From Basidiobolus meristosporus CBS 931.73 (Eukaryota > Fungi > Basidiobolomycota), in the NCBI GenBank assembly GCA_002104905.1, contig MCFE01000267.1, positions 1-64,000 of the forward strand: a stretch of DNA of 64,000 nt. The letters run 5' to 3'. Position 1 is the first letter of the stretch, and every line of letters starts with the position of its first letter. Positions 1-58,546 of this stretch are shown here, in pieces. The notes under the pieces were generated by a model that did no database searches, had not been told where the DNA came from, and was given only the letters and a program-made list of their open reading frames with translations. The position numbers and the translations under genes are program-made.

Positions 1-2922
1 ACGACCCACAAATACCAAATTGCCGTCGGGCAGGTAGCGGGCCAAATCACCCGTCTTGTACATACGAGCTTCCTTTTGCTTGCTAAACGGATCGGGAAGG
101 AAACGCTCGGCCGTCAGCTCAGGACGGTTCAGATAACCGCACGCGACACCATCACCGCCAATGTGTAGCTCCCCAACTGTTCCCAATGGTGACGGCTGGC
201 CATGCTTATCTAGAAGATAAAGTCTCGTATTCGCAATCGGACGACCAATAGGGATGTCTTTACCTACATCTGGGGGAGAGGAAATTCTATATGTAGTCGC
301 AAAAGCCGTACTTTCCGTGGGCCCGTATGCATTTAGCAGCTGTTGAGGTGGAGCATTGCGCATCACTCGTGCTATGACCCTGGAGTCGAGTGCATCTCCA
401 CCGGTAATTACTATTTTGAATTGCGGCAAGATTGGCTCTAGATACACCGCCATGTGATTAAACAAGCCAATTGTCAAAAACATCACGGTTACCCGCTCTT
501 GCCGCAAGACTTGCACAAAGGAGTTTGGTGAAAGCACGGTACGGTGATCGATTATGACAACTGTTCCGCCATTAAGTAAAGGCGCCCAGACTTCAAAAGT
601 GCTTGCGTCAAAGGCAGGGTTGGCTGCAAAAGCAACGCGATCATCGACTCGGATGTCAGCATAGTCATTATTGATGACTAGTCGAGCAACCGCTCGATGT
701 GGCACAACCACACCTTTAGGTAAGCCGGTTGAGCCGGAGGTGTACATTACGTAGGCTGCATCGTGACTGTCGCTTTCTCTATCTAGATTTGTAGTCTGTG
801 CTTCATCATCCGTTTTCAATGTTACTCGCAGCAATGACGTCCGTATGATAGTTGGGACTTCAGTATGTGCATCTGTTACTAAAAGCCGTGCGTTGCAGTC
901 ATCTAAAATCCAAGCTTGGCGTTCTGCAGGAGCCTGAGGATCTAAAGGAACATATATTGCCCCCGCTTTCAATATTGCCAATTGAGTGATGATCAGCTCC
1001 ACTGAGCGCCCGATCAAGGTAGCAACGTAGTCGCCTGCATGAATGCCCAACTCAATAAATTGGTATGAGAGACTGTTGGCTTGGGCATTCAGATCGGCAT
1101 AGCTCAATGCCTGCTGCGAATAAACCAATGCGATGGTCTGTGGTGTACGCGCAGCCTGCTCCTCATATAAGCGATGGATACACTTCTGTGCGGGATATTC
1201 GCGCTCAGTTGCGTTCCATTCCACTAGCTGTAGCTGACGCTCGGCAGCATCGAGCAAATCAACGTTGCCAACCGCCCGTGTTGGTTGTGATGTAAGGGCA
1301 TTGAGGAATTTCAAGAACCGGTGCCCGAGTGCAGTCTGCTCTTCATTTGGGCAATTAGCATTATAGATCCATCGGAAACTGCCATCTCGTTCGCATATTT
1401 GGAATGTGATGCATCTCCCATATCCCTCTTCAGTGCTACATTTAAAGGTATCCTGTGCGGCGTCCTCAGAATCGCGCTCAGGTATGACGGCTACCGCGAT
1501 ATGCCAAGGTTGCGGTGAGCGTAATCCTTCGATACCACGGAGCGTCGGGTGACGAGCTATGATATCTTTGGGGAAGGCTGAATGTTTTGCAAGGCGTGCG
1601 GATTCAGTGGTCACGTCTTCACGAACCTTAAGGAAATTTTTCTTTAAATCGACATTAACTTCCATCGGCACTACGGCAGCAAACAAGGCTGGAACTGTCG
1701 GTTTTGGCGGAGTGATGGGTACCCAACCAAGTTGAAGAGATGTCTCACCGGTAATCCGAGCCAAATAAATTATGAAAGCAGTTAAGATACACTCCATTCG
1801 ACCAACGTGAGGCAGGTTCTCCAATTCATCAGGAAGATTCCATGAACTCGCTTTCCAGCAGAATGGCAAGGAGATAGTATGGGGCTGCTCGATTGGCCAC
1901 TCCGACGAATTGAAACGTTGTAGTCGCTTTAACCAGAAAGACTCTTGTTTTGCAGCAGCCTCATATTCACTGGTCAACGCTCGAATCTGCGTTTCTGATA
2001 ACGTTGGGAGGCAGTCGCCAACCCCGAGGCCCGACTGCAGCGCTAATGTCTGAGCATCCAACGGTTCTCCAAAAATGGTAGTAAACTTACTGATAGCGAC
2101 GTCTTCGCTTCCGGTTGTAACATACCAACAATATGAATCTATTTTCACTATGGTTCCCGGCTTGGCTCCAGATCGCTGGGTATGTATATCCAATTGAGCC
2201 ACATGCACGATGCAATTTGGTAGCAGCAGTTTAGGCAAGGAAAATGAGTTAGGATGATATTCTCCAAAGTCTAGTGCTCGTACAAGGGCCGATAAATCCT
2301 CTGCTGTATTTTGCCAGGATAAACACCCCGCAGCTCCTGGGCGACGGTGAAATGGGAAAAAACTCCTGTGCTCTAGATCTTGAGCTTTTGAAGGTATCGT
2401 GCCTTTAACAAGGCTCTCGACAAGCGCGGAGAAACCCTTGATAGCTGCTTGATAGCACTTCAAGTTCAGCGAAAGAGCAGTATCACTTTGGGAGATGTCT
2501 ACGGGACACTGAACAACAATATCTCCGGCGTCAACTTTGCTAACAATACGATGCCATGTGACAGCATAGTCCCTCTCATGTAAAAGCAAGGCCCAGGATG
2601 TGGCATGAGTACCGGCGTAACGTGGTAAAGGAGCATCGTGGTAGTTGAATGCGTGCAGCACACGGTCAAATAGTGAGGCCGGCAAGATGATAGGATTGAT
2701 GATTGAAAAGAGCATATCGGCTGGATTGTTTTCAAGCATTTCACAGAGATCCTTGACAGAAGCTACGCGGGGTAGATTTTCACGAGCAGCCCAGGTTTCT
2801 ACTGTTGTGTCGGTGGGAAGTACTGCTTGAAGACGAAAGCCAGCTGCTTGCAAGCACCGAGCACACTCGACGGCTAATGTAGTACCGCCTATCACAACAA
2901 AGGAATGTAATTGTCTTACCAT
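1..2922 (-). CDS. Non-ribosomal peptide synthetase, 5' part (formyltransferase F domain - vestigial C-like segment - adenylation domain); continues beyond window start
   Basis: Manual translation gives an uninterrupted frame from ATG at 2922 (in-frame stop upstream at 3013-3015) to base 1, 974 codons, no introns. F domain: MVRQLHSFVVIGGTTLAVEC...AFNYHDAPLPRYAGTHATSWALL...VTWHRIVSKVDAGDIVVQ, followed by an FMT C-terminal-like part (RALDFGEYHPN...PGTIVKID). A domain motifs: LSYADLNAQAN (A1), YVMYTSGSTGLPKGV (A3), FDASTFEVW (A4), NAYGPTE (A5), GELHIGGDGVACGYLNRPELTAERF (A6), MYKTGDLARY (A7). Confidence 0.95.
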   Translation of the reverse strand, partial: MVRQLHSFVVIGGTTLAVECARCLQAAGFRLQAVLPTDTTVETWAARENLPRVASVKDLCEMLENNPADMLFSIINPIILPASLFDRVLHAFNYHDAPLPRYAGTHATSWALLLHERDYAVTWHRIVSKVDAGDIVVQCPVDISQSDTALSLNLKCYQAAIKGFSALVESLVKGTIPSKAQDLEHRSFFPFHRRPGAAGCLSWQNTAEDLSALVRALDFGEYHPNSFSLPKLLLPNCIVHVAQLDIHTQRSGAKPGTIVKIDSYCWYVTTGSEDVAISKFTTIFGEPLDAQTLALQSGLGVGDCLPTLSETQIRALTSEYEAAAKQESFWLKRLQRFNSSEWPIEQPHTISLPFCWKASSWNLPDELENLPHVGRMECILTAFIIYLARITGETSLQLGWVPITPPKPTVPALFAAVVPMEVNVDLKKNFLKVREDVTTESARLAKHSAFPKDIIARHPTLRGIEGLRSPQPWHIAVAVIPERDSEDAAQDTFKCSTEEGYGRCITFQICERDGSFRWIYNANCPNEEQTALGHRFLKFLNALTSQPTRAVGNVDLLDAAERQLQLVEWNATEREYPAQKCIHRLYEEQAARTPQTIALVYSQQALSYADLNAQANSLSYQFIELGIHAGDYVATLIGRSVELIITQLAILKAGAIYVPLDPQAPAERQAWILDDCNARLLVTDAHTEVPTIIRTSLLRVTLKTDDEAQTTNLDRESDSHDAAYVMYTSGSTGLPKGVVVPHRAVARLVINNDYADIRVDDRVAFAANPAFDASTFEVWAPLLNGGTVVIIDHRTVLSPNSFVQVLRQERVTVMFLTIGLFNHMAVYLEPILPQFKIVITGGDALDSRVIARVMRNAPPQQLLNAYGPTESTAFATTYRISSPPDVGKDIPIGRPIANTRLYLLDKHGQPSPLGTVGELHIGGDGVACGYLNRPELTAERFLPDPFSKQKEARMYKTGDLARYLPDGNLVFVGR

Positions 2923-3673
2923 TGAAAATGTTCTGAGTGTGATGTAGGAGCATTCTTCCGGTTTTATACAAACTACCACCCATTCAGGAGAGAACTGTTG
3001 CCGAAAGAATAATTATACGAAGCCAGTAGTAGTGTATTAATTGCATAAAAAATTCCTGTGATCCCCAGATAACTGCAAATGACGGTCAGACCATGCATAT
3101 CTTGGGATATACTTGATGACTTCATTTTGACTGCACTGCGCATTGGATCAGTATGCGTACAATAGAATGTCGAAATCATTCAGTCATTACAAGATCACAG
3201 TAATACTCGGTTCGCCTAAACTATGGCATATTGTGGACAATCATCATTGCATGGTTCGGTGATGCTGATGGTTTGCCAATTCATTGACTACTGGAGAATA
3301 TTGTGATCAAAGCTTGGACCCATGTGGGGGGCTTGAAAACCCCGCTTATCTTGGGACACTGCTTAATCTGAGGTCGGCCGGATCCCCCCCCAAAAAAATT
3401 GATCTATCGAAATCTCGAAATGCCATATCACAACAAATAAATATCTAGATACAAATCTACTTATTTGAAACAGCCTCTTAATTGGCAACATAATGAAATT
3501 GGAAGGATTTTCAACCTTCCTAAATGACTACAAATATCCGGTATAGCGGATGCGACCTTTCTCCAGCCTTGTAACTGCACTTGCACCATTGGTATCAGAC
3601 AATCTATACTACTGAACTGACCTGCAATATACTTTTATAGCTCCCAGCAACACTCCACTAATTCGTTGTAGTA

Positions 3674-3962
3674 CATGGTAAGAAAAGAAATTAAGCAAAG
3701 GCCAGCACAAGTCCATCATAATATCAGCTAAATTCCAGGTTTTACTAAACATATAACTCTCAATATCTCAGTTTCTAGCTATTTGGTAGACGAGCACGCA
3801 TATTCTCCCTGAAATGACTAGGTTAACTAGCATTTATACCTAGTTTAGTAATCAGCTACTCACTACTTCTACCAAAAATTGCTACTCAAAATTTGAAGGA
3901 AAAACACCAGCAGAATCGCAGCAGATTATCAATGAGTTCCATGATTGAGATTTTCCACAAGG
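3674..3962. mobile_element. Decayed MITE-like element, homolog of the insertion at 47035-47356
   Basis: Colinear similarity by eye, e.g. aaaggccagcacaagtccatcataatatcagctaa vs aaaaggtcagcaaaataccatcatagtatcagctaa and tttagtaatcagctactcactactt vs tttagtaattagctgcccattactt; termini eroded, boundaries approximate. Confidence 0.6.
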
Positions 3963-4804
3963 ACAGAGTGTTGCAGATCCTCTCATTATATCTAAATAGT
4001 TATAAATAGTTATAAAAGCTTGGTGTATCAGTTTTTCTGGCTCCTGCATAAACTCTCCTTCAATGTTACTCTGAAATATTTTTCATTCAAATACTAGATA
4101 ACTGGTTTATGTTGTTTCTTGGGGTTGTCCAAGAAGACCTCAAAATATGTATACACATACCTGAGACCCCTCTGAGTCTTTTCTGCCACTTTTACTAGCA
4201 CACTGAAGTAGTACATATATTACTTTGCTTTGAAATGAATCATCCAGCAAGTTATGTATTATCACAGCTCTCCATATAACTCTAAACCTTCAAAGCTATG
4301 CTATAACACTTCAGGTATAGTGCTGCTTTACTCTGCTGATGACCCAAACACCCAACATATCTGACTGCTCTACTCTTAGGGGCTAATTGGGAGCTGCAAG
4401 ATTGTGGGTTGAATTGGAAGCGCCTTTATAGGCCACAAAGCCCCAATAATGTCTTACTATTTTTACTGAGCTCAGATATATTACTTTTGCATTGAGGAGA
4501 ACTGTGTAGTACTAGTAATGTGAGTAGCCTAATCAAGGTTCCAGGAGATTGAATCCAAAGCTTTGGGCAGCTGGATAGCTGTCAGCATTCTTATAAAAAA
4601 ACTCCAAGTATAGGCTGTACCTGATTAAGATAGATTATGATCTAGTGTTCCACAGTTAATCATTGCACTAAGTAATGACTTGTATTACATGGGTGGTTTA
4701 GGATCAACTAACCATAAGCAAGAAGAGAAATATGATGACTTCATCTCAAAGTTAGCACTATACTGCTGTTTCCAAGTGAATTTTTAATAGCACCTGTACT
4801 TAAG

Positions 4805-5020
4805 TGTAATGTATAAAACTGCTTTAAATTTTGTAGCTACACTTAAGTAGTCACATAACTTAGTCACCTGACTCACTGCTTACAATCATTAGAAAATTCT
4901 GATCAAGTTCCCTGGTGGGTTCACTTGAAATATTCTCACCAAAATATCAGCTACCCAGTATATTAGACATATCCTAGTTGTCAAAGCAACCCCAAACCTT
5001 ACACACATTGTTGTATCCAA
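4805..5020. repeat. Diverged fragment of a copia-1-related LTR
   Basis: Shares acttagtcac, gaaatattctcaccaaaatatcagctaccca and ccccaaaccttacacacatt with the solo LTR at 6413-6763 and the reverse complement of 33942-34291; appears truncated. Confidence 0.45.
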
Positions 5021-6412
5021 GAGAAAAGTGTAATAAAACTCTTGAATGAGTTGACTGAACCTAAGTGACAACTAAGTGCAGAATCTTAGAATTGTCAAGG
5101 GTGACAGAAATATTAGCAGAGAATTTCTGGTCCAATATTGGTTTTGTATATAGTTGAGTTAGGCTATAAAGGCAACAGAGTTGGTTTGCTATACAGGCTA
5201 GGCTTGGTGTTCTTGGGAATGCTAGATATGCTAGGCTTGGGTGGAAACTCAAATGGAATTGTTGAATTCTTAATTTTGCTGAGGCACAATCTTAATTTTG
5301 TTGAGACACACACTAAACTAAAAGGTTCAGTAAACTTTATTTATACTTTTCTGATCAAGTTGAGTTAGTAAGCGCCAAGAGACTGGACTAATTGAAATCT
5401 GTTGGGGTGTGGATAGGTGCATAGGATAAATGAGAAATTGCATCATTAATCAGCCAATGTCTTGGCAACTACTAAGTGGTTGGATAGATCTCAGATGACT
5501 AACCCTTTGGAAAGGCTTAGCAGATCAGTTGAGGACATAACAACCACTTAAAAATTGATCAGGTGTAACAGCTAAAAATAGATTCTGAGAAGTGATAAAA
5601 TAAACCATAACAGGGATTAGTTATGTTTTGGTTAGGGAAAATCAGTTAGGGTATTAGATTTTCTAATGGAGTAAAATAGGCTAAATTTTAAATGTTGATG
5701 TACAACACATATGATCTCAGGACCATCCTAAACATATGCTATGCATTTGCTTTGCAAAGACCATGCAATAGCATAAGTACTATTTTTGCATTCAATGAAT
5801 CAATAAGTGGAAACCACCTAATTTATGTGGGCTGCCAATTACTTCTAATATCTCCAGGTTTCTGACTACAGAAACAATGCAATATCCAATCAATGTACAC
5901 AAATGTAGGAGAAAATTGAGTGTCTGGTATCAGGAAGGGAGAGAAAAGGCAGAGAGCCAATTAAATGCAACTTAAGGGCTATTGGGGGTGGGGAATAGTT
6001 TCACCAAGTAATTTGGGAAATTCAGAATGCAAATTTGTTTCAATTGTTTTAATACTGTATCATAGCAGCATCCATACTTCTTGGTTGCAGGATTTGAGTT
6101 TTATGACACCCTATTTGTAGAAGCATTGCTATTACTCTTCATATGGGATGAGCCAGTTGTGCTAGGCTTATGAGGAAAACTGCAAGGGTAAGTTTCTAGA
6201 ATATGCATTGAAATATTTGTTATTTAAAATATACATATAACCAAAATACTGAGCACACTTTGTCATAGTTTCTAATATAAAGCAACTCACTCAAGCCAAG
6301 TAATTGGATTGCTCTGTCAAGTTTGTCAGAGCTTTAATTTGGAAAATGATTGCAAATATTAAGTCACTTGATAAGATGATGTCCTGGCAAGTTATCAACA
6401 ATGGGATACATT

Positions 6413-6763
6413 TGTTGTGATTATTGAGTTGTCACCACAATATTCATGCAAACTTAGTCACATGGATCCTATTCTTTGACTAGCATTCTGTCCTGACCAA
6501 ATTTCTTGTTAGGACTTGCTTGGAATATTTTCACCAAATTATCAGGTACCCAGATTATGATCTTTCTCAAAGTTGTCCAAAAACCCCCAAACTTTGCACA
6601 CATATTCTTGGGACCTTTCTTAACAAGCTCTAGACGTTTGCTTGCTCTACTTAGGTATATAGGTATAAATACCATACTTTTGATCAATAAATCTACAAGT
6701 GAATAACATGTAAATCCTCTAGTTCTCCACATCACTTCCAATACTCCTCAGAATATTGCAACA
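6413..6763. mobile_element. Solo LTR related to the copia-1 LTRs, opposite orientation
   Basis: TGTTG...CAACA termini; flanks ACATT (6408-6412) and GCATT (6764-6768) form a 4/5 target-site duplication; reverse complement aligns with 33942-34291 (e.g. aaggtcccaagaa.atgtgtgcaaagtttgggg). Confidence 0.85.
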
Positions 6764-8680
6764 GCATTGCACTTGTTCTGAAAAGACTCTGCTGATTTGA
6801 AAGCTGCTGAATTTGGTATAAGATGCACTCTGTTCAATGGCACATTAGTACAAGTCTAAAAGTAACCATCAGGTATGTAACAGCTGTATGTACTTAGCTT
6901 ATACCCAGCCATTCATATACTACAAGATTGTACTTGACATATTGTTTAGTTAGGAGCTGCTTGCCTAAGATTAAATGTGGGAAATACAGGCTAATTGCCA
7001 GATATAGCAAAGATCTGAAAGTTATTACATTTTCTCAAGCCTATCTGGAGCCTCAAAATAAATTCAACAAGATCGCCAGATTGTCTGTGTAATATTTAGT
7101 GTCCTCTTGTTAGGATTGAAAAGCATCAGATCACATTTGGAATTGACAGTGATGAATTGTATGTATTTTCACTACTCGGTGCATTTTGACCTATTGAGTC
7201 AGATATAAAGTTGTTCAAGAATGGGAGTTTTGTAGTGGTAATGATAATGAGTTTTTTAGGTAACCCCCCCCCTGAAAGGTAGTGTTGAGTTTAGGGTCGC
7301 AAAGTGGTTAAAAATGTACGAATAAATCGCCGCAAACAAAGAGCATTTGCGTTTATCTTGGATGCACCTGACATTGGCGAGATCGGCAGAAACGGGGGAA
7401 CTTTGCTGAGAGGTGGGAGATAACCAACGGGTTGTGGCTTGGTTGGAAACATAAAGGAAAGGGAAGGGAAGGGGTCGCGAATGATACCTTGGTCAAGATC
7501 GTAGACACCGTGTTGCAGAGCAACAATACCAGATTTTGGAGTTAAGCTTGTTGGCAAAAGTACCGTCGAAAAGTTTATCGTATACATCTCCGGAGATTCT
7601 TCTACTACACCAAGAGCCCATTAGAATATAGAGTCGACTCAGGTACGTGAGTTTCTCGCCACACCCACCATCATGCCTCGAGCAGATGTCATGGAATTTG
7701 AAGGTCTTCGGGTTCACTGGCCTTGAGCTACGTGAAATCCATATACCCCATTCCAGTACAATATGTAGCACAGGGTTAACCAAGAAACTCAATTACGTAT
7801 ATGGCCCAGTGATGAGATCTGACGAGGTTATCTATTTGAACTTGTCTGAAGTGGCACCACGGAAATTTTGAGCATCCACTAGCTCCCACGCCCCGTTCCC
7901 AACCTTATTGCTGACGGCTACCCCAGGGGTAGGCCTAAAGCCACCTGATGTTCGAGCTTTTCCATCTCACAGAGTTCCTAAAATCCCGTATTGTGGCGAA
8001 GTCCAATGGATTCCTCTGATCACCGATTGCAGAGCGGGGTTGTCGATACCCAGGCATGACTAAATCCATATTCCCCTCCAAACCCAACTCTATCCTACGA
8101 TTCGACGCTTCTGTCACCGGTGAAAGGCCCGCCTGACCTCGAGGTGAGCCTGAAGCCACGCCCAAGCACGACGATATCCGCTGGACGTTTTCAGAGACCT
8201 GACGACTGTGTCATAATTGCTGTCTCCGCCCGTTGGCCGCGTTCTCAAAGAAGTGTGTGCTTCATTTGCGCGGCACGTATTCGATGCAGGTCCGTCCGTA
8301 GGAGAGCTAGATGTGAGGGCTTCTGCCACTCCTCCAGGAGGCTGCGGACCTTGAAATACACCGAACAGCACAGCACCTGGTGAGATGAGGGGAGGGGCCG
8401 GGGTTTTCCCGACGCCTCACAATAATTAGAAGCGCCCGGTATAATTCTAACGCTGTCTTTAATATTGAAAAGTATCAAAATTATCTGGTGTCTAGTACAC
8501 CACCTGCCTATCACCGCCAGCCCAAACTCTTTGCGACCAACCGGGAGAAATGTGGGGGAGGGTATGGACAGAATAAAGTAGCACGAACAAGGTTATCAGC
8601 TTCTATCGCTACATGGCAAAATCCTCTCGACTACAATTATTAACTGGGGCCCTGGTATAGCAACTTCTGGTAACTTATTT

Positions 8681-10153
8681 TCATTCACATACTATTTTAG
8701 CATCGAAACTAGTTAGGGCGATCCCAAAAGCTTGCAGCGCGCAGAGAGGATAGCTGTAATCCAGCGTGAAGGCATTGTAGGAGACTCTGCCAAACTGCAT
8801 CACTGTGTAATCCACTGTGGGTCGGAGAACCGGTTAATAACACGTTCTGTCAAACGTCGAGCTGCTGAAGCATTACCATCATCCTGGTGCACAATCTGGA
8901 AATTTTTTACTGACGCTAGAGTGACCCGGCCATTGAAGTTGAGAACGTAGGACATCGTATCTGTGGTTGACGGATCAGACATGCACCACTTTCACCGGAC
9001 AATAATCCCTGCTTACCCTCATTCCACTGTGGCGACTTATTCCGCAGAGCCAAAACCGACTCAGCTCCACAGTTCTTGTACTGCGAAATCAGTCCGTCCT
9101 CTTTCTGTGGAATGCCAGCGATCAATTTCCCCCCGTTGTGCTAACTCGAGTGTCCCTGCTTACCTTGGTCGGGTGTAGGGGTAGGCGAACTCCAGCTTTG
9201 CTCATCCCGTTGAGCAGCACGGTCATTTTTCGAGGTCCTTTAAATCCTAGTATATTTGGTTCCTGATCAACATGCAACAGTTCAGTTCCCTGAGAAGCCG
9301 CAAACAAAATAGCATATCCACATACGTATATAACACCACATAGCTCTTCCCGAAGCTGGCCAGAGGTATGAGTTTCCTGGTCGGACGTCGCCGATTCAAA
9401 GGTACCACTGCTATCTATATTACATTTGGGACTTCTCCCATGATCATATACAACAAATGCGGTGCCAATGAAGTTTGACCTATGCCAACCGTTAGTCAAA
9501 GAACCTCGCTATCTCGTCGTACACTTACCGGACTTTGCCCACTATCGTTCCGTGTTTAGAATTACTTTTGGGCACCATGATTTGATAGTAGGACGTGGTA
9601 CTTTTTATGCACTTCGTCGCGGTTAGCAGTAAAGTCTTGCATCCATCTTCCTCTTCCTTGTACATCTCATATACGGGATACAGCGAAGAGCGTGTTCGGC
9701 GTCTCAGCACGCGACATAATATCGGCTCACCTTGGGGCGCAGGGCTAGTACGAGGGGTCGTTAACAAAAGCCCACAATGGAGCAAAGCCGTGGCACAGCT
9801 TACCGCTTGATGAACTCGTTTAGATCGAACCCGTCTTCGACCAGACTTAATTTAGACTCGTCCATATCAAAAGGCGAAAGAGTAGCTCGCGAAGGTGATA
9901 GGGGGGACAAGGAGGGCGAAGACTGGCAATGGACATCTGGTTAGTCGATGGCAGTGAGAGAGTTTTAGACCCAGGGCATTACCAGCGATGGGGACAAGGG
10001 GTTTGTGTTAGAGGACCCTCCGAAGTTTTCCATGACGTCCAAGCTCAGGCCTAGTTTCTCTTGCGACTCCACGGGGCGAATACCATTGGAGCATTGCGGC
10101 TCTCTGCCGGCTTCCAGTCTGAGTACCGAAGTGTTCCAGTCTGCTATCTGCAT
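8681..10153 (-). CDS. Tubby-domain (TULP-like) protein, multi-exon; 5' end uncertain
   Basis: Splicing GT-AG introns gives [15 protein letters not shown]...LYPVYEMY...[16 protein letters not shown]...[21 protein letters not shown]...[34 protein letters not shown]...[40 protein letters not shown], all canonical Tub-domain motifs; stop at 8681-8683. Confidence 0.92.
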
Positions 10154-11460
10154 ACCTTGGAGTATCTATCGCCAACTAAAACGTTATGAAATATTCGGAG
10201 GCCTTTGAGGGCGTGATTTGACAGGACGAGAAGGCGCTTTCTATGTGTGCTCTCTATCTACTGGTCGAAATGAGGGCGTATCTGATCCACGGGGACTGAT
10301 GATAATTAGCTGCTGGTTGGAATGAATAGATGGCCCTTCGTTTCCGCTCTTTAAAGGGTCAGAGGCTGAGTAGCGGGTAGAGGTGATATAAATCGAGTAC
10401 GCGGACATTCCGTACCTCGCCCCATTTATACACACAGGGATGGACGATTATTGAAGGGCAACCTTCAAAAGCACCGATTGAGTTTCAAAATGGTCAATAG
10501 ACCTTCATCCAAATAAAATAGGTTCTCATGCAGGACAGAAGTAATGTGAAGTGATGCGATATGCCAATCCATTCGATCAGTCCTTTAGGTAGCTTATCGG
10601 CTAACAAAGGATACGTATTGGAATCGTCGCCATGCACAAGCTGTTGACTATTCAATATAGCCATCGATGTCCCGCTTGTTGCCTACTGTTTGTGTAAAAT
10701 GCCGTTCTCTGCATGGCATGCACGTCGTACAAAATGTTGATGAAATCTTGCTTGATTTCCATGTTTCATTTGAAGGCCACCTGCCTTTACTACTTCCAGA
10801 ATCAGGCAATCCACAAAATCCCCTAGCAAGGTCATTCGGAACCCAACACCCATGCTGTAAACGAGCATTGGGGCTGCATCCAATTTCCCCGCGATGGAAA
10901 ATCTTCAGCAGCAACATTTCCAGGCATGAAGGATCCTTTGGCTCGGCAATTAAGCCCGGCAAGCAAGATGAAGGCTCTGTAGACTGTCGTGTGAATCGGC
11001 AGTGTCCTCTGTCAAAGCTGAGCTGGCCTCTCCTGTGCCACGGAGATCCGGAGAGTATAGTGACTTGAAGCTGGTCCCTCTGCAATATGCTAATGCGAAT
11101 TCGGTGTTTCTGGAAAGCCTATATTTGAAACCTAAAAATGGCGCCATTCTTAGTCCCAATCTAGTCATGAATCCGGCTGGGATGATGAATATGACCTGGT
11201 AGTGGTAAAATGTGCACTGCTATGTGACTACTAATCAGGTCACATCATGACCATTTGACGTGCCCTGTGGTACAGCGGCGATATTATCCTAATTCACCCT
11301 CCCCTCCATAATAATCCGGATCAACTAGTATTGCTCAATAATCGCTGTTGCTTGCATTCATCCCAGCATGAAAGTCAACATCAGATTGGGCTAAAACCAT
11401 CAGCTAGTCGGGTGACCTGGGTGAATTGGCCTCGCCACTAGCGTTTTATAGGGCCTGCGG

Positions 11461-13443
11461 ATGGGGAGAGAACTCACAGCTTGTTCTTGTTCTACAATGG
11501 AAAACTTTCTCTCTTTGCCACTTCAGATTGTTGAAGATATTTTAGCTCATTCGGAGTCTTTGGCAGCGTGGACTCTGGTTTCGAAAGAGCTCTATCAGCT
11601 AGTGTACACCTCTACTGGCCTTAAAGCAACCTGGCTTCGCCGTAGCTATATACGCGCCAAGAAGAAATTCCCCTCGGACAGTGCCTTTTGCCTAGATAGG
11701 AACAACTCCGGTTACGAAGAAGATCTGGATGACATGTCCAATGCGGATCTAATGATAGACGAATTAGCCGCTGAACAGGATGCGGAATTACTTTTCTTGT
11801 ACTGGAGACAGTACATGGGGGATTGCACTTTTGCAGAGGATGAAACTACATATCATCGGTGGATTTTGGATGACCAGTATCACAACCATTGGTTTATTTC
11901 TCGGTTCGCCAATATTATTCCGCGGCACACTGCCTTTCTAACACAGGAATTAGTGGAACTGCTGAAAAGTCACTATGCGAGCATATATGGCGAGATGTAC
12001 GACTCGCTCTTGCTAGCAACCATAAGAAACAACAGTCCAGATGCGATGCGTAGTCTATTACGGCAATCCCCAGACCCATTCGTACTCAAAAGACTACCCT
12101 TAGCATACGCTATCGGACAAGGATCCAGAGAAGTAACTCAGCTAATGTTGAGACAGTTTCGGGTGAAATTTAGCATGTGCCACGCAATCGCCTGTATCAA
12201 GGAAGGCGATATGGATGCCTTGGAGTGGATGCTACAGCGCTCGCTGAACAAATGCGACATATGGGATGGGAACTTTTGCGGGTTTATGCGTGCGCTGGGA
12301 ATCAGCCTGTCAAAAGGTGCGCATCGTAGTATTCGGTTGATTCTCGGCACGCTCGCGTGCTCAAATGGGCTTCCATCATTTGGCTTGCACAGATGGGTAA
12401 TGTATCCTACTCGTGAGCAATCACTCAACCCAGAGCCTTGGAAGTCAATCCTACGACAGGTGTGCTTTTGCTCTGCGGATATAGATACCTTTGAATTCGC
12501 AATTGGACTATGCGCCGAGATTAGCCAAGTCGACAAAAGGGTATGGCGTGAACAAGCGTTTCTCTGCTGCAGCAAATACTTCCCACGGTACATCACTCGA
12601 ACATTGGTGGAGCACCTTTTGTCCGGAGGGGTGGATCCCAACGTCTCAGAAGGGCTGGCTATGTGGTACGTTGGATCCAGCTTTATGAATGAAGAGCATT
12701 TTGAATATGAGATTCGAACTTTTGCTGCAATTCCCATCGACGACCCGATCGTCAACGGTGAGGTGTATCTCGATTTTGCCAACTCCTTGATTACCAGAGG
12801 GCTCCGAATTACTGAGAAACTAATTGGGAATTTTGTAACCGAGAATTATCGAAGGTTTCTCCAGATCCTCCATGCAAAACACAACCTGCCGCTGACTACC
12901 CAGTCGAAGTCTCTGCTATCTGTTGCACTGGACGCCCATATAATATCTACCAATATGATCCGATTCCTGCTGGCTAGCGGTGTTGCAGTCGATCCTAATC
13001 ATTTTCTTCTAGGCGTAACTAAGGGTCGATTGGACATAGTAGAGCTGCTATTCAATGGTTTGCATGATATCCAGCCTGCAACGATGGCACATGCGCTGGA
13101 GATTGCCGTGAAATGCATGCATCTGGAGATAGTCAATTTCTTGTTGGAGCACGGAGCAAGCCTGGAAAACTTGCTTAAGGAGTTCTGCATCAGCTATCCC
13201 AAAGACGGATCGTACTTGGAGATTAAATGGATAGTCAAGTTTCAGGATGATCATATTCAAGTGGACTTGGCCAGCAAGAAATGGTCGCTACAAACGCCAC
13301 GAGACGATGTATTTCTTGAGATCCTGAAAACTCTGGGCACCACCTGGTCAAAGCTTCAGAATATTCCCCGGGTGACGCTGCTGTTTTGCTCCGAAGGAAA
13401 GGCCGAACCACAGAATGTGATCAAGAAAGTGGTGCTTTCGTAG
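11461..13443 (+). CDS. F-box-like / ankyrin-repeat protein, intronless
   Basis: 660-codon ORF; N-terminal FLSLPLQIVEDILAH...WTLVSKELYQL is F-box-like; C-terminal ankyrin-like repeats (GVTKGRLDIVELLF, ALEIAVKCMHLEIVNFLLEHGA). The true start may be the second Met (MENFLSLP). Confidence 0.8.
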   Translation: MGRELTACSCSTMENFLSLPLQIVEDILAHSESLAAWTLVSKELYQLVYTSTGLKATWLRRSYIRAKKKFPSDSAFCLDRNNSGYEEDLDDMSNADLMIDELAAEQDAELLFLYWRQYMGDCTFAEDETTYHRWILDDQYHNHWFISRFANIIPRHTAFLTQELVELLKSHYASIYGEMYDSLLLATIRNNSPDAMRSLLRQSPDPFVLKRLPLAYAIGQGSREVTQLMLRQFRVKFSMCHAIACIKEGDMDALEWMLQRSLNKCDIWDGNFCGFMRALGISLSKGAHRSIRLILGTLACSNGLPSFGLHRWVMYPTREQSLNPEPWKSILRQVCFCSADIDTFEFAIGLCAEISQVDKRVWREQAFLCCSKYFPRYITRTLVEHLLSGGVDPNVSEGLAMWYVGSSFMNEEHFEYEIRTFAAIPIDDPIVNGEVYLDFANSLITRGLRITEKLIGNFVTENYRRFLQILHAKHNLPLTTQSKSLLSVALDAHIISTNMIRFLLASGVAVDPNHFLLGVTKGRLDIVELLFNGLHDIQPATMAHALEIAVKCMHLEIVNFLLEHGASLENLLKEFCISYPKDGSYLEIKWIVKFQDDHIQVDLASKKWSLQTPRDDVFLEILKTLGTTWSKLQNIPRVTLLFCSEGKAEPQNVIKKVVLS

Positions 13444-29625: not shown

Positions 29626-32600
29626 TGTTATAAGAGTCTTAGAGATATTGGAAGTGATTGGGAGAACAAGTAGATAATGTGTTTTTCACTTAATGATTTA
29701 TTGAATGTAAAAGTAGTATTTATACTTTTACCTGGTCTTGGCATTACAAACACAAAGAATAGGTTAAGGAAGGTCCCAAGAACATGTGTGCAAAGTTTGG
29801 GGCTGTTTGGACAACTTATCTAATTTTCATATTCTGGGTAAATATTCTAAGTAAATCCCAACAAGGAATTTTGGTCAGTATTCTCTAGGATTTGAAGGTG
29901 ATGATCTAAGTGACTAAGTTAGGTGAATATTTAGGTGGAAATACGAATTTTTACAACACTCCCACTCAGCTAAATGTTCATACTGACTAGTCCTAATTTT
30001 GACCTAAGATATTCAAACTTGTCTCTAGCTAATGGTTTGGTAAATATGTCTGCAATCATTTCATCTGTAGGACAGTAAACTAAGCTAACTAAGTTATTCT
30101 CTATAGCTTCATGTATGAAATGATGATGTCTAATATCTATGTGCTTGGTTCTAGCATGAAAAGTTGGATTTCTACCTAATTGTATACATCCTTGATTATC
30201 TTGAAATAAAGTTATAGGCGTTTTTTGACATAGGCCTAAATCTGTAAAAAGTTTTCTTAACCACATTGCTTCTTTTGTAGCTTCACAAGCTGTCATATAC
30301 TCTGCCTCTGTGGTGGAAAGTGCTACAGTTGGTTGCTTTCTTGAATCCCATGAAATTGCTCCTTTACAGTAAAGAAAGGAGTATCCTGTGGTGGATCTTC
30401 TGTCTTCAAAATTTTGTCCCCTATCAGCATCAGAGTATCCCACAAGATCCTGTTCTGAATCCTTATAAGTGTATCTTAAGCAGATATCAGCAGTTCCTTT
30501 TAGGTATCTAAAAATCTGCTTAACTGCTGCAATATGATCAGATCCATAGTTCTGATTATGTTGGCTGACAACTCCCACTGAATATGAGATATCTGGACGT
30601 GTTCCAAGCATGATATACATCAGACTGCTGACCATAGATTGATAGGGAAAGTCAGGGCCTTCAGATGGCACCAAGCTCTCTTGATTTGGTTGAGTTTTGA
30701 CCAAGTTAAGGTTTGTCTCCATTGGGGTAGCTGCCGGTTTACAGTCTTCCATTTGGTACTTCTTTAGTATATCTTGAATATACTTGAATTGGCTTAGGGT
30801 GATAGTCTGGGTACTTCTGTCTATGGAGAACTTAATCCTTAAGTAGTAACTGAGTTCTCCTAGATTGGACATCTTGAACTCTTTAGATAGGCTGGATTTA
30901 GTCTCTTCCAATGTTGCAAGGTTATTGGCAGCTATAATAAGATCATCCACATATAGAGCTAATAGAACTGGATTTGCTCCATCTGGCTTATAGTATATAC
31001 TATAGTCAGCATTACTCCTTTTGAAACTCAAAGATTCCAAATAAGAATCTATCTTGCAAATCCAGGCTCTTGGTGATTGTTTGAGACCATATAGTGACTT
31101 TTTCAGCTTGCAGACCAAATGGGGGTTATCTTGGTCAACAAACCCATCAGGCTGGTCCATATACATCATTGTCAAGTTCTCCATTCAAAAATGCAGTTTT
31201 ACATCCATTTGATGAATAAAAAACTTATATTTTGCTGCAATAGCCAATATTAGTCTGATGGAATTAAACTTGGCTACCGGTGCAAAGGTCTCAGTATAGT
31301 CAAGTCCTTTTGTTTGAGAGTATCCTTTGGCTACAAGTCTTGCTTTGTATCTTTCAATTGTACCATCAGCCTTGAATTTTGTCTTGAAGACCCATCTGCA
31401 TCCAATTGATTTTGGTTGATTGGTAATTTGACTAAATCCCAAGTTTGATTTTCCATCAGGGCCTGATATTCCTCAGTCATTGCAGATCTCCAAAACTTTG
31501 TCTGAGGGCTATTTAGGGCCTCTTTTACAGTCTGGGGCTCATCAATATGGACTGAATAGGAATAGGCTAAGTTTGTACTCTCATTGATATAGTAATTTGG
31601 GCTATTTCTTGTCCAATTGGATCTCCGGGCATTTGATACTGGAATGAGCACTTCTGGGATATTCCTGGGCACTGATTCTGGCAGAACCATGGTTGTTGAG
31701 TCCTCTGGAGTGAAAAAATTTTCATTGTTTTGCTCTGATTCAATCCTCACAATTGGTGGACTTGAGATCAAATTTTTGTCATCATCTGATGTCATTTTTT
31801 GTGAAAATTTTGAATTTTCATCAAACAACACATCCCTGGACTTGATCAGCTTCTTAGCTTTGGTATTGTAGAGTCTGTATGCCTTACTCTCATTGCAGTA
31901 GCCCAAAATATGCATTTTACACTTTTTAGCTCAAATTTTGACTGATTTCCGGCTAGTTTTTTGGCATATGCTGTACACCCAAATATTCTTAGATGTTCTG
32001 CACTTGGTCTGTATCCATACCATGCTTTAAATGGAGTAGAATCACAAAGTATTCTGTTATAACTCCTATTTTTAAGGTATACGGCAGTGGCAACTGATTC
32101 CGCCCAAAAATCATAGGATAATTTTTGATCATAGATCATAGATCTTGCCATATCAATTATTGATCTGTTAGCTTGTTCTGCTACTACATTTTGCTGTGGG
32201 GAGTATGGTACAGTAGTCTCTTGCTTTATCCCATGAATTTTGCAGAAGTGAATGAAGAGTTTTGAGGTATATTCTCCACCATTGTCAGAGCATATTTTCT
32301 TGATGTTTTCACCAGTTTCTCTCTCCACCATGGCTTTAAACTCACTGCGCTTAGACAGAGCTTCTTCCTTTCTCTCCATGAAGTAGACCCATGTGTATCT
32401 TGTATAATCATCAATAAAAGTGATTAAATACTTCATCCGCCTAAGGATAAATTTTGCATAGGTCCACACAGATCTGAGTGAAGTAGATCTGATTTTTTCT
32501 TAGTTTTGATTAACCTAGAGCTCTTGAACGGTTGTCTAGCTTGTTTCCTGTATATTCAGGCTTCACAGTGCTCCAAATTAGCTGGGGGATCAATTTTCAC

Positions 32601-34291
32601 TCCAGAAATTAGCTGATCTTTGATCATTTTACGCAAATAATCAAAATTGATGTGTCCAAGTCTCCTGTGCCAAAGCATTGGTGTTTCTTCATTTAAGTTA
32701 CTTATATTGGCTTCCAAATATGATGGAATATAAGTCAACTTGTATAGATTCTGATCTTTGATGCCCAAAGCAATATGAGCACCATTTTGATCAGTGATCC
32801 TACATCCAGAATTGTCAAAACTGAAACTGATTCTTCTGCTGTGGCCTTGCTTACAGAGAGTAGGTTCTTGGCTATCTCTGGTACATAGAGTACTTCTTTA
32901 AGGGTCAGTGTATGGCTTCCTTCACTGCTTCTAAGGTTTACTTGGATAGTTCCTTCTCCCACTGCATTAAGTGTTCTATTGTCACCCATGAAAACCTTCT
33001 TAAATGGAATTTCTTGATATTGGGTAAAAAGTTCTTTTTGGTGTGTAAAGTGTTGAGAAGCTCCAGAGTCAATATACCACATCTGAGAATCCTTGTTTGT
33101 GGTCATATTTAGTGCAGATATGAATAGTCTATCTTCAGTTGTTGCAGCATTTCCATATTCAGGCTTCTTTTGCTGATTATCTTTCTTCTTGAGACACCGG
33201 TCTGATGTGTGTCCTTTCCTTTTGCAGTAGTTACAAAACAGGTTGCTGTTGCCTTTGTAGGGTCTTGGGTACCTCCTTTGTGGGTTATTATTGCTTATTA
33301 AAGCATTTTCTTTTTCCTTCCTATTGGCACTTGATTTTCTTAATTCTTCATCCAGGAGCCTTCCATATACGTATTTTAAGGTCAAATCTTCAGTTCTGGA
33401 CTCTAGGGCTGATACCAGGCCCTGAAACCTGTCTGTGAGGCTATTCAGGATGGAAACTATCACATCCTCATCAGCAGTTGGTACGCCCCCAGATTCCATC
33501 TCATCTACCAGCAGGGTAATTCTGTTAATTAGATTTTTCATTTCTACTCCTGACAGCATCTTTGTAGTTAAGAATTTTCATCTCAGATACATTTTCTTAG
33601 CAGCTGAACATGACTGGTAGGTGTCTTCTAATGCTTTCCAGGCATTCTTTGCTGTTTTTGCTCTTGAGCATTGAATTAGCAATTTGTCCTTGACATTAAG
33701 GCAAATGGAGTTAAAGGCACTTTGTTCTTTCTTCTGGTACTTTAAGACTTCCTCTCCCACGTTTTTAGGAGGGCATTCTTCTCCCATGACAATATCCCAA
33801 AGGCCTCTTTCTTGTAACAACATCTTCATCTTCACCTTCCACACTTGGTAGTTAGATCCATCCAACTTTTCAGCAGAGGGAAAAGTTCCAGTAATAGCAG
33901 TAGTAGACATTGCAGAGAGTGACAGCTTGGGGCTCATAACCTGTGGTAAGAGTCTTAGAGATATTGGAAGCAAACGGGAGAACAAGTAGATAATGTGTTT
34001 TTCACTTAATGATTTATTGAATGTAAAAGTAGTATTTATACTTTTACCTGGTCTTGGCATTATAAACACGTAGAATAGGTTAAGGAAGGTCCCAAGAACA
34101 TGTGTGCAAAGTTTGGGGCTGTTTGGACAACTTTGAGAATTTTCATGTTTTGGGTACCTGGTATTTTGGTGAAAATATTCCAAGTAAATCCCAACAAGGA
34201 ATTTTGGTCAGCATTCTCTAGGATTTGAAGGTGATGATCTAAGTGACTAAGTTAGGTGAATATTTAGGGGGAAATACAAATTTTTACAACA
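29626..34291 (-). mobile_element. Full-length Ty1/copia LTR retrotransposon (copia-1), inactivated
   Basis: 5' LTR 33942-34291, 3' LTR 29626-29958 (17-nt internal deletion), perfect 5-bp TSD CATAC (29621-25 / 34292-96), PBS GGTTATGAGCCC, PPT GAGTGGGAG. Gag (KLDGSNYQVWK; CNYCKRKGHTSDRC), PR (WYIDSGASQH), IN (LWHRRLGH; FIDDYTRYTW; SDNGGEY), RT ([14 protein letters not shown]; LYVDDL), RNase H (GYSDAD; EAEY; DIFTKPL) in copia order with several stops/frameshifts. Confidence 0.97.
33930..33941 (-). other. Primer-binding site GGTTATGAGCCC of copia-1
   Basis: Immediately follows the 5' LTR end (...CACA) on the minus strand. Confidence 0.85.
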
Positions 34292-56844: not shown

Positions 56845-58546
56845 GGTTATGAGCAGTGTATGTGGAACAAGTGAACTTAGCAAGGCACAGTTCTGTAGAG
56901 CACTAAGAAAAGGCACCCAGATGTTCCTCATGGCAGTGTTACAGGAGGATTTTTCTACTCCAGTACCACAGAAGGTTCAGACTCTTTTGAAGGAATATTC
57001 AGACATATATCCAGAAGAGCTTGTAAGCCTACCACCAGTCAGAGATGTGGATAATGCCATTGAAATAGGAGATAGCCCTCCAGTGAGTAAGACACCTTAC
57101 AGAATGAGTCCATTGGAGTTGGAAGAGATGAAGCAATTAATAGATCAGTTACTGGAGCAAGGATATATCAGACCCAGCAAGTCACCTTGTGGAGCACCAG
57201 TACCTTTTGTGAAGAAGAAGGATGGAATACTTAGGATGTGCATTGACTACCAAGCCCTCAAATTAGTTACCATGAAGAATAAGTACCCCATACCCTGGAT
57301 TGATGAGCTCTTGGACCAACTCAATGGAGTCACAATTTTCAGCAAGATTGACCTCATGTCAGGATACAACCAGATTAGGGTGAAGCCAGAAGACATCCCT
57401 AAGACAGCATTCAGGACCAGATATGGAGATTACAAGTACTTAGTCATGAGTTTTGGACTCACCAATGTCCCTACAACATTCATGACCCTGATGCAGACCA
57501 ACTTCCAGGAGTACTTAGACAAGTTTATCATAATCTACCTAGATGATATATTGATATACAGCAAGACAGAGGAGGATCACTTGGTGCACATTGAAAAGGT
57601 CTCAAAGAAGCTAAGAGAGAACAAGCTTTATGGCATGCTACCCAAATGTGAATTCTTCAAACAACATGTTGAATGTCTGGGACACATAGTGACTGGCACA
57701 GGAGTAACCTTAGACCCTAAGAAGGTTGAAGTTATCAAGAATCTGAAGCAGCCCCATAGCATATCAGAGCTTGGATCATTCCTTGGAATGGTTTCCTATT
57801 ATCAAATACTTGTCAAGTCCTTTGCAAGAATTGCAGCCCCTTTAACTGATATCCTCACAAAAGACAATACCTACAAGTGGGACATAGCTTGTGAAACGCC
57901 TTCCAGATGCTCAAGAATGAACTTGCTAAGCTGCCAAGCTTAGGAATACCTGACTTCAGAAAAGAGTTTACTCTGTGCACAGATGCTTCAGATTATGCAA
58001 TTGGTGAAGTGTTGAGCCAAGAACACAAGGGAAAGAACTACCCTGTTGCCTTTGAATGCAAGAAACTGAACTCAGCAGAACAAAACTATCCAGTGCATGT
58101 GAAGGAGATGCTTGCTATAATACACTGTTTGAAGACATGTAGATGCTATACTGAAGGAGTCAAATGTACTGTAAAGACTAATCATGCCTCCCTCAAGTAT
58201 ATATTTACTCAGAAGGTACTCTCTAGAAGAATGACAAGATGGAGTGAATACATTTGGCAATTTGACTTGTAGATTGTCTACTGCCCTGGAAAAAACAACA
58301 CAGTTGCTGACACCTTATCAAGATTAGAACAAGTTGCACAACTCAACTTGGTGCATGAATCAGATTGGCCTAGCCTATTACCAAAGTACCTGGAGGACCA
58401 AGCCAGTCCTAATGCGGTGGATGAAGATATCAAGAAGATAATCTGGGATGAAGCCAGCAAATATGTAGTACAGGATGAAACACTCTACCAGATTGTTGAT
58501 GGAAGCCCCATTGCCTATTGCCCTTATGTTTATTGACTGGATCTGA

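What the first reader, a model, noticed from the sequence alone, without database searches (positions are those of the whole stretch)
2025..2922. Fungal NRPS starting with a complete-looking formyltransferase (F) domain
The ORF missing from the track begins with an N10-formyl-THF-dependent formyltransferase fold. The N-x-H catalytic pair (AFNYHD, 2638-2646), the SLLP-like APLP loop and the catalytic Asp (VDAGD, 2521-2535) are all intact, and an adenylation domain follows. Established: F-A-T initiation modules make N-formylated peptides in bacteria (e.g. LgrA of linear gramicidin). They are not a standard feature of fungal NRPSs. Inference: this fungus makes an N-formyl non-ribosomal peptide, a class that in animals can engage formyl-peptide receptors or form membrane channels. 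The product is probably uncharacterised.
Basis: partly seen in the sequence, partly recalled or inferred. Interest (0 to 1): 0.88.

Follow-up and report, generated by a model that had tools for sequence, protein, structure and literature searches.

The report
Formyl-capping starter of a fungal NRPS
An unannotated, intron-free gene in the fungus Basidiobolus meristosporus begins a bacterial-type peptide assembly line with an intact-looking formyl-adding domain, probably acquired from relatives of fungus-dwelling Burkholderia; the domain type is already known in bacteria, and the window cuts the gene off before its carrier domain.

Summary
A minus-strand open frame runs from the ATG at 2922 off the left edge of the window (974 codons, no stop, no intron).

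- **Domains.** Residues 1-305 are a two-lobed ArnA/Fmt-type formyltransferase. Asn93, His95, Asp131 and the LP loop are invariant across 40 relatives. Residues 587-974 are an adenylation domain with motifs A1-A8 intact.
- **Fungal DNA.** The flanks carry fungal and retroelement genes. DNA-run contigs cover gene and flank at equal depth (109 against 107).
- **Origin.** The F half groups at 100/100 support with two Basidiobolus ranarum proteins and a Glomeribacter MAG, inside Proteobacteria. The A domain is instead nearest to Mycoavidus, Mycetohabitans and Mortierellaceae modules.
- **Formylation.** A 51%-identical F domain heads the probable szentiamide synthetase of Xenorhabdus szentirmaii, whose product is N-formylated. 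LgrA is only a distant relative.
- **Not shown.** I could not see a T domain, the rest of the gene, any expression or any product.

The scan had already noted this same stretch (s1-233679). General transfer of bacterial NRPS genes into Basidiobolus was published in 2020. I found no paper on a fungal F domain. I class it as a new member of a known kind, of moderate interest.

The parts
1..2922 (-). 5' part (974 codons) of an intronless NRPS gene. It starts at the ATG 2920-2922 and runs off the left edge of the window.
   Evidence: DNA-run contigs continue at least 733 nt beyond window base 1.
2338..2922 (-). Formyltransferase domain, N-terminal catalytic lobe (residues 1-195)
   Evidence: Pfam Formyl_trans_N. 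ArnA alignment. Model pLDDT mostly above 90 and Foldseek match to ArnA/Fmt.
2638..2646 (-). Catalytic Asn93-x-His95 (NYH), followed by the APLP loop
   Evidence: Invariant columns N93, H95, L99 and P100 in 13 and 40 sequences, including ArnA and Fmt.
2530..2532 (-). Catalytic Asp131 (in VDAGD)
   Evidence: Invariant in alignment A1, aligned with the catalytic Asp of ArnA and Fmt.
2008..2337 (-). Formyltransferase domain, C-terminal beta-barrel lobe (residues 196-305)
   Evidence: Pfam Formyl_trans_C. Foldseek aligns about 308 columns to the whole ArnA formyltransferase domain 2bln, TM 0.85 by target.
1228..1962 (-). Remnant of a condensation domain: its C-terminal half only (residues 321-565), with no HHxxxD motif. 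It forms the platform in front of the A domain.
   Evidence: Pfam Condensation profile positions 193-454 of 456, E 8.7e-4. Model pLDDT 84.5; Foldseek matches to Txo1, RzmA, CDA and LgrA C domains at E about 1e-10. No HHxxxD.
1..1164 (-). Adenylation domain, core motifs A1 to A8 (residues 587-974), cut at the window edge. Specificity positions read DAFGIGAAF.
   Evidence: Pfam and TIGR01733. Motifs located. Specificity code from alignments.
2923..5000 (.). AT-rich upstream flank (GC 0.38) without long ORFs. It has the same read depth as the gene.

Best explanation
The ORF is the initiation module of a bacterial-type non-ribosomal peptide synthetase that sits in the Basidiobolus meristosporus nuclear genome after horizontal transfer from a proteobacterial lineage.

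**Origin.** The donor was most likely among the Burkholderiaceae that live in or with early-diverging fungi (Glomeribacter, Mycoavidus, Mycetohabitans).

**Mechanism (inferred, not shown).**
1. The A domain activates an aliphatic hydrophobic amino acid and loads it on a downstream carrier (T) domain.
2. The N-terminal ArnA/Fmt-type domain uses N10-formyl-tetrahydrofolate and its Asn-His-Asp triad to formylate the alpha-amino group of the tethered residue.
3. The half condensation domain between F and A has no catalytic motif. It only keeps the usual C-A platform.
4. The formyl-aminoacyl starter is then passed on.

By analogy with all nearest relatives (F-A-T-C-A-T-TE), the product would be a short N-formyl peptide, perhaps a dipeptide.

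**Shown:** domain identity, intact catalytic residues, fungal integration, bacterial ancestry.
**Inferred:** formyl donor, substrate, presence of T/C/TE domains, expression, product.
For: - **Domains.** Pfam and NCBIfam calls (5, 6). F fold: model pLDDT 88.6, Foldseek to ArnA 2bln TM 0.85 and to Fmt 0.82-0.84.
- **Catalytic residues.** The triad and LP loop are invariant in 13 and 40 sequences.
- **Half C domain.**
- **A domain.** Motifs A1-A8 are intact.
- **Coding constraint.** All 28 columns invariant across the 40-sequence family are kept. The tree branch length (0.34) is like that of the bacterial sister (0.35).
- **Fungal locus.** Neighbours include Kre9/KNH, PAP2, ankyrin, copia and Tnp2 genes. 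Word depth is 109 on the gene against 107 on the flank in two DNA runs.
- **Ancestry.** The clade (Glomeribacter MAG, (window, two B. ranarum)) has 100/100 support and is nested in Proteobacteria. More than 1280 bacterial 50%-identity clusters match at E<1e-30. Atlas neighbours are 97-100% bacterial.
- **Formylation precedent.** The X. szentirmaii DSM 16338 locus L005 has 51% F-domain identity. Its layout is F-A-T-C-A-T-C-A-T, its second A code is Thr-like (DFWSIGMVH) and its third is Phe-like. That fits szentiamide (formyl-Leu-Thr-Phe-Val-Tyr-Trp), an N-formylated product, and SzeS is drawn with an FT domain.
- **Likely architecture.** The nearest relatives are bimodular with a TE.
Against: - The window ends at A8, so no T, C or TE domain is visible.
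- No protein for this gene exists in the protein collections at 535-3830 aa, so the gene may be broken further on.
- No RNA run could be listed. One run of the same sample, X3, has no contig on bases 1-5000.
- Codon usage does not resemble four neighbouring host ORFs (r 0.01).
- Formyl transfer has not been assayed for any member of the Basidiobolus/Glomeribacter clade.
- L005 is identified as SzeS by organism and partial A-domain codes only; its first-module code was not assigned to Leu.
Confidence: 0.65

Rival explanations
1. Silent or decaying relic. The transferred gene is truncated, frameshifted or never transcribed in B. meristosporus, so no N-formyl peptide is made.
For: The gene is not in the annotation track (as the finding states). 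No matching protein is in the public protein sets. No RNA run was listed. The gene lies beside an AT-rich repeat and transposon block. Tabima et al. report at least one transferred Basidiobolus NRPS without expression (PMC7466969).
Against: There are 974 codons without a stop (chance about 2e-21). All family-invariant residues and A-domain motifs are kept, and the branch is not lengthened. Contigs from reads continue at least 733 nt beyond the window edge. Missing annotation could simply reflect the window or contig edge.
Confidence: 0.22
2. The N-terminal domain has the formyltransferase fold but does another job: transfer of a different group, hydrolysis of formyl-THF as in FDH, or a purely structural role. 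The peptide would then not be N-formylated.
For: The fold family includes hydrolases (10-formyl-THF dehydrogenase N-domain) and sugar-specific enzymes. No biochemical work exists on this clade. Pfam matches only the second half of Formyl_trans_N (profile positions 88-177).
Against: The Asn-His-Asp triad and SLLP-type loop are invariant across the family. A 51%-identical domain heads the probable synthetase of N-formylated szentiamide. Its position in front of the first A domain is that of known F domains (PMC10510592).
Confidence: 0.08
3. Bacterial contaminant or chimeric assembly. The NRPS piece belongs to a bacterium and was joined to fungal DNA by mistake.
For: The gene is intronless and its nearest relatives are bacterial. 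There is a unitig break at 2542-2569 inside the gene.
Against: Depth is equal on the gene (109) and the fungal flank (107) in two runs. The break lies inside the ORF, not at its border, and the contigs overlap there. The protein alignment to homologues is colinear across it. GC is 0.49, as reported for Basidiobolus genes. Sister genes sit in B. ranarum contigs with AT-rich flanks.
Confidence: 0.03

Closest known systems
Szentiamide synthetase SzeS of Xenorhabdus szentirmaii DSM 16338 (probable identity of locus L005)
   Same: Same loading layout: a long formyltransferase domain, a half condensation domain, then the A domain. F-region identity is 51%, and it falls in the same proteobacterial clade of the tree. 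Its product is N-formylated (PMC3343279). SzeS is drawn with an FT domain (bioRxiv 10.1101/2020.05.06.080655).
   Different: It is a bacterial, multi-module line (six residues). Its first A domain has a different code (DAWAIGAVC against DAFGIGAAF). The identity of L005 with SzeS is inferred, not proven.
Glomeribacter sp. 1016415 MAG protein MCX8566191.1 (P0251) and the Mycetohabitans 2536-aa NRPS (P0254 and P0252 cluster)
   Same: These are the nearest bacterial relatives. P0251 is 66% identical in the F domain and 43% in the half-C, and forms a 100/100 clade with the Basidiobolus genes. Architecture is F-halfC-A-T-(C)-C-A-T-TE.
   Different: The first A domain of P0251 is only 40% identical. 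The window's A domain is 65-67% identical to C-A-T modules of Mycoavidus sp. SF9855, Mycetohabitans and Linnemannia gamsii, so the gene is a mosaic. I know of no products for these bacterial genes.
Basidiobolus ranarum hypothetical proteins KAK9703355.1 (P0121) and KAK9763050.1 (P0250)
   Same: Fungal, intronless and in the same clade. P0121 is 54% identical over all 974 residues. P0250 is a complete F-halfC-A-T-C-A-T-TE.
   Different: At 54% they are paralogue-level or older relatives, not orthologues by identity. Their A codes differ (DVFALGATF and DAFALGGTF). They are annotated only as hypothetical or carrier-domain proteins.
LgrA initiation module of linear gramicidin synthetase (F-A-PCP; PDB 5ES5 and related)
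   Same: Same proposed chemistry and the same position at the start of the line. The Asn/His/Asp formyltransferase core aligns over about 100 residues (PMC10510592).
   Different: The LgrA F domain is 193 residues and abuts the A domain directly. Here the F domain has both Fmt lobes (about 305 residues) plus a 245-residue half condensation domain. Sequence match to LgrA is E 2e-3 against 3e-17 for ArnA.
Mollusc FmtATR of the bursatellin/oxazinin pathway (PMC11869996)
   Same: A eukaryote-encoded NRPS with an N-terminal formylation domain, thought to stem from ancient bacterial transfer. The Entomortierella relative P0001 has the same F-A-T-R layout and has introns.
   Different: It is an animal gene with introns and ends in a reductase. 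I did not compare it by sequence here, and formylation by the full enzyme was not reproducibly shown in that paper either.
ArnA N-terminal domain and Met-tRNA formyltransferase Fmt
   Same: Best solved-structure matches for the whole F domain, with both lobes and the catalytic triad.
   Different: Identity is only 21-26%. They are free-standing or fused to a dehydrogenase and act on UDP-Ara4N or Met-tRNA, not on a carrier-bound amino acid.

Membership tests
NRPS formylating initiation module (F-A-T) | Formyltransferase fold at the N-terminus of the first module | tested here: met
   Pfam Formyl_trans_N and Formyl_trans_C. Foldseek to ArnA and Fmt, TM 0.82-0.85 by target.
NRPS formylating initiation module (F-A-T) | Catalytic Asn-x-His, Asp and SLLP-type loop conserved | tested here: met
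   N93, H95, D131, L99 and P100 are invariant in alignments A1 and A2.
NRPS formylating initiation module (F-A-T) | Adenylation domain with intact core motifs downstream of F | tested here: met
   AMP-binding E 6.8e-83, TIGR01733 above its cut-off, motifs A1-A8 found.
NRPS formylating initiation module (F-A-T) | Carrier (T/PCP) domain after the A domain | not testable with these tools
   The window ends at motif A8. Contigs from reads go 733 nt further but their letters are not available. All close relatives have a T domain.
NRPS formylating initiation module (F-A-T) | Formyl transfer from N10-formyl-THF to the tethered amino acid; N-formylated product | not testable with these tools
   The only support is by analogy with szentiamide from X. 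szentirmaii.
LgrA-type short F domain | F domain of about 190 residues joined directly to the A domain, and closest in sequence to LgrA | tested here: not met
   LgrA matches at E 2e-3 over 99 residues, against ArnA at 3e-17. Here the F domain is about 305 residues and is followed by a half C domain.
Bacterial NRPS genes transferred into Basidiobolus (Tabima et al. 2020) | Nested among bacterial sequences in a tree | tested here: met
   The 100/100 clade with the Glomeribacter MAG lies inside Proteobacteria. A single all-fungal clade is rejected at p-AU 0.00125.
Bacterial NRPS genes transferred into Basidiobolus (Tabima et al. 2020) | Integrated in fungal DNA and not a contaminant | tested here: met
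   Fungal and retroelement neighbours. Depth 109 against 107.
Bacterial NRPS genes transferred into Basidiobolus (Tabima et al. 2020) | No introns; composition like the host genome | tested here: inconclusive
   No intron in 2922 nt. GC is 0.488, equal to the published mean for genes. But GC3 is 0.45 and RSCU is uncorrelated with four neighbouring ORFs, a small and unverified sample.
Bacterial NRPS genes transferred into Basidiobolus (Tabima et al. 2020) | Transcribed | not testable with these tools
   No RNA run was listed. The supplements of PMC7466969 are not held.

The most novel reading that the evidence does not exclude
Basidiobolus, a vertebrate-gut fungus and occasional pathogen, makes short N-formyl peptides from a small family of F-domain NRPS genes taken from endofungal Burkholderiaceae. 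These would be the first formylated non-ribosomal peptides of a fungus, and they might act on the host (for example through formyl-peptide receptors) or on gut bacteria. A second possibility is that the shared F, half-C and A modules among Glomeribacter, Mycoavidus, Mycetohabitans, Mortierellaceae and Basidiobolus mark a common pool of NRPS parts exchanged between early-diverging fungi and their bacteria.
Probability: 0.1. Interest if true: 0.8.

Novelty: new member of a known kind. Interest (0 to 1): 0.5.

Why it matters
N-terminal formylation is a rare way to start a non-ribosomal peptide. In the literature I could search, it is described for bacteria and, since 2025, for molluscs, but not for fungi.

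This locus, together with two B. ranarum genes and an intron-bearing Entomortierella gene, shows that early-diverging fungi carry such starter modules with the catalytic residues intact.

It also sharpens the published picture of gene transfer into Basidiobolus. For this gene the nearest relatives are bacteria that live inside other early-diverging fungi, not typical gut bacteria, and the gene is a mosaic of parts from that pool.

If the gene is expressed, it gives a concrete target for finding a new class of fungal metabolite: look for +28 Da N-capped short peptides. If it is silent, it is one more transferred NRPS relic.

Tried and rejected
- **Full-length protein.** I looked for it three ways and found no match to this gene in the length ranges searched, 535-3830 aa (535-1704 for the A-domain search). 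The searches were the F region with the 974-aa frame, the F region through the longer B. ranarum homologue, and the A region. The rest of the gene therefore stays unknown.
- **RNA evidence.** None was listed. The second run search gave only DNA-type runs. Laying contigs showed presence and depth but no transcription.
- **Tabima et al. supplements.** They are not held, so I could not map the gene to a published gene model or TPM value.
- **Codon usage against host ORFs.** No correlation. I do not lean on this, because the four host ORFs are mechanical ORFs and few.
- **Earlier scan notes.** They gave no piece that continues this gene. No note mentions 'formyl'.
- **Reimer et al. 2016.** The paper is not held, so its view on the origin of the LgrA F domain could not be checked.
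- **Rejected readings.**
  - LgrA-type membership.
  - Mitochondrial Fmt: 21% identity, and this domain is fused to an NRPS.
  - An active starter C domain: there is no N-terminal lobe and no HHxxxD.
  - Contamination.
Full report
**What is there.** The window comes from Basidiobolus meristosporus, according to earlier notes of this scan. That agrees with the nearest fungal homologues being from B. ranarum. On the minus strand an open frame starts at the ATG at 2920-2922, 31 codons after an in-frame stop at 3013-3015. It runs without a stop or any sign of an intron to window base 1, which is 974 codons. From base composition the chance of such a frame is about 2e-21. ORF lists omit it only because it runs off the window.

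**Domains.**
- Pfam finds Formyl_trans_N (residues 76-164), Formyl_trans_C (199-293) and AMP-binding (587-931). NCBIfam finds an amino-acid adenylation domain above its curated cut-off and an ArnA-like N-terminus.
- Among solved structures the best sequence match to residues 1-330 is the ArnA formyltransferase domain (E 3e-17), followed by sugar N-formyltransferases and Fmt. LgrA appears only at E 2e-3 over 99 residues.
- An AlphaFold model of residues 1-590, built with 40 homologues, has mean pLDDT 88.6. Its first roughly 308 residues superpose on the whole ArnA formyltransferase domain (2bln, TM 0.85 by target) and on Fmt (0.82-0.84). Both lobes of the fold are therefore present.
- In alignments with E. 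coli ArnA and Fmt, fetched from NC_000913, Asn93, His95, Asp131, Leu99-Pro100 and Gly104 are invariant.

Residues 321-565 are not a linker.
- They match the Pfam Condensation profile at positions 193-454 of 456. The match is weak in this protein (E 8.7e-4) and stronger in relatives.
- They match the C-terminal part of C domains in Txo1/Txo2 and RzmA.
- They are 24.5% identical to the true C domain that precedes the closest A domain.
- A separate model of this segment (pLDDT 84.5) hits NRPS condensation domains (Txo1, RzmA, CDA-C1, LgrA) at E about 1e-10, covering about 40% of a C domain.
- There is no HHxxxD motif.

The loading module is therefore F (two lobes), then the C-terminal half of a C domain, then A. 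All relatives share this layout. It differs from LgrA, whose 193-residue F domain abuts the A domain (PMC10510592).

**The A domain.** Motifs A1 to A8 are intact. I used the window's own motif positions as anchors and checked them on a Thr-like module of Xenorhabdus, which reads DFWSIGMVH. The nine specificity positions visible here read DAFGIGAAF. The closest A domains read DAFGIGGTF. From my own knowledge this resembles the canonical valine code DAFWIGGTFK, so an aliphatic hydrophobic substrate is likely. That is an inference.

**It is fungal DNA.**
- The rest of the window holds Kre9/KNH, PAP2 and ankyrin ORFs, copia-type Gag/RT pieces and a Tnp2-type transposase.
- In two DNA runs of what may be the source sample, assembler contigs cover bases 1-2569 at word depth 109 and bases 2542-5036 at 107. 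A 3302-nt contig runs 733 nt beyond the left edge of the window.
- The one contig break, at 2542-2569, lies inside the ORF at its most conserved motif. Protein alignments are colinear across it.
- Contamination or a chimeric join is therefore very unlikely.

**Where it came from.**
- The F region belongs to a very large, almost wholly bacterial family: 1280 clusters at 50% identity match at E<1e-30, and Atlas neighbours are 97-100% bacterial. Common layouts in the family are F-A-T-TE and F-A-T-C-A-T-TE.
- The best matches are two B. ranarum hypothetical proteins (60% in F, 54% over all 974 residues), a Glomeribacter MAG protein (66% in F) and an Entomortierella protein (55%). Burkholderia, Photorhabdus/Xenorhabdus, rhizobia and Mycetohabitans follow.
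- A maximum-likelihood tree of the F plus half-C region (43 rows, LG+C20) gives (Glomeribacter, (window, (B. ranarum a, b))) at 100/100. Basidiobolus monophyly has 89/74 support. The clade lies inside a 100/100 proteobacterial clade (quick tree).
- Forcing all four fungal rows together is rejected (p-AU 0.00125), so Basidiobolus and Entomortierella acquired their genes separately.
- The Entomortierella gene has introns and intron-bearing neighbours, so it too is a real fungal gene.
- The gene is a mosaic. Its A domain is only 40% identical to the first A domain of the Glomeribacter protein, but 65-67% identical to C-A-T modules of Mycoavidus sp. SF9855, Mycetohabitans sp. B6 and Linnemannia gamsii.
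- All of these point to the gene pool of Burkholderiaceae that live in or with early-diverging fungi.
- Tabima et al. 2020 (PMC7466969) described widespread transfer of bacterial NRPS genes into Basidiobolus and favoured gut bacteria as donors. They do not mention formyl domains.

**Does the domain formylate?** This cannot be tested here. Three lines support it.
- The catalytic residues are intact.
- The position is that of known F domains.
- There is a relative with a known product. The best hit in reference genomes is a locus of X. szentirmaii DSM 16338 (51% identity). Its gene reads F-A-T-C-A-T-C-A-T and onward, with a Thr-like second code and a Phe-like third code. This fits szentiamide, formyl-Leu-Thr-Phe-Val-Tyr-Trp, described as N-formylated. 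SzeS building blocks are drawn with a formyl-transferase domain. The identification of the locus as SzeS is my inference.

**What is not known.**
- The T domain and everything after it lie outside the window.
- No public protein corresponds to this gene, no RNA run could be listed, and the 2020 paper's tables are not held.
- Codon usage is closest to the B. ranarum paralogue (r 0.74) and unlike four neighbouring ORFs (r 0.01). GC (0.488) equals the published gene mean. I treat this as inconclusive.
- The nearest relatives are all bimodular with a thioesterase. That is the best guess for this gene, and it would give a short N-formyl peptide.

**Comparison and novelty.**
- The kind of system, an F-domain initiation module, is known from LgrA and other bacterial lines. 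Since 2025 it is also known from molluscs, as FmtATR (PMC11869996).
- I found no paper that links formyltransferase or formyl peptides with Basidiobolus, or that describes a fungal F-domain NRPS.
- Homologous fungal proteins are already in GenBank as hypothetical proteins.
- The scan had also noted this same stretch as an intronless bacterial-style NRPS (s1-233679).
- I rate it a new member of a known kind. It is a sound, moderately interesting lead whose value depends on showing the complete gene, a transcript and a product.

Noticed in passing
window 5000-5650: A repeat with assembler word depth of about 1e5 in DNA runs X1 and X2, against about 107 for its flanks. It ends in GGTTAGGG...GTTAGGG near 5621-5652. 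It looks like the telomere-repeat-tailed SINE/LINE family noted elsewhere in this genome.
   Followed up: partly
window 2401-2600: The depth rises to about 155-158 (against 108), and there is a unitig break at 2542-2569, just beside the F-domain motif NYHDAPLPRYAGTHATSW (about 2593-2646). This may point to a second F-domain paralogue in the genome, as B. ranarum has two.
   Followed up: no
window 29970-34183 (-), 52662-57943 (+), 62340-63668 (+): Copia-type Gag, Pol beta-barrel and RT pieces, an RVT_1 ORF and a Tnp2-type transposase ORF. The right half of the window (GC about 0.39) is a transposon field.
   Followed up: no
L001 (GCA_031963465.1, JASSUG010000001.1) 1-12368: In an unnamed bacterium the single-module F-A-T-TE relative P0002 sits next to a Trp_dioxygenase/DUF6875 gene and a 4013-aa NRPS. 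This is an odd pairing of a formyl-adding NRPS with an enzyme family that makes N-formylkynurenine.
   Followed up: no
L085 (Entomortierella beljakovae JAAAVF010000749.1) 1937-6863: An F-halfC-A-T-R gene with introns in a Mortierellomycotina fungus. It has the same layout as the mollusc FmtATR enzyme that makes N-formyl-tyrosinol, and was acquired separately from the Basidiobolus genes.
   Followed up: partly
window 1-5000 in runs X3 and X4: Run X3 (same sample as X1 and X2) and run X4 (same species label, other sample) have no contig on the gene or its flank, though X1 and X2 cover both at about 108x. Either the library kind differs or the strain does; this is unresolved.
   Followed up: no
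family-wide: Hundreds of bacterial single-module F-A-T-TE proteins of about 1440-1480 aa occur in Acidobacteriota, Cyanobacteriota, Verrucomicrobiota, rhizobia and others. Variants carry nitroreductase (PF00881) or hexapeptide (PF00132) domains. I know of no product for these.
   Followed up: no
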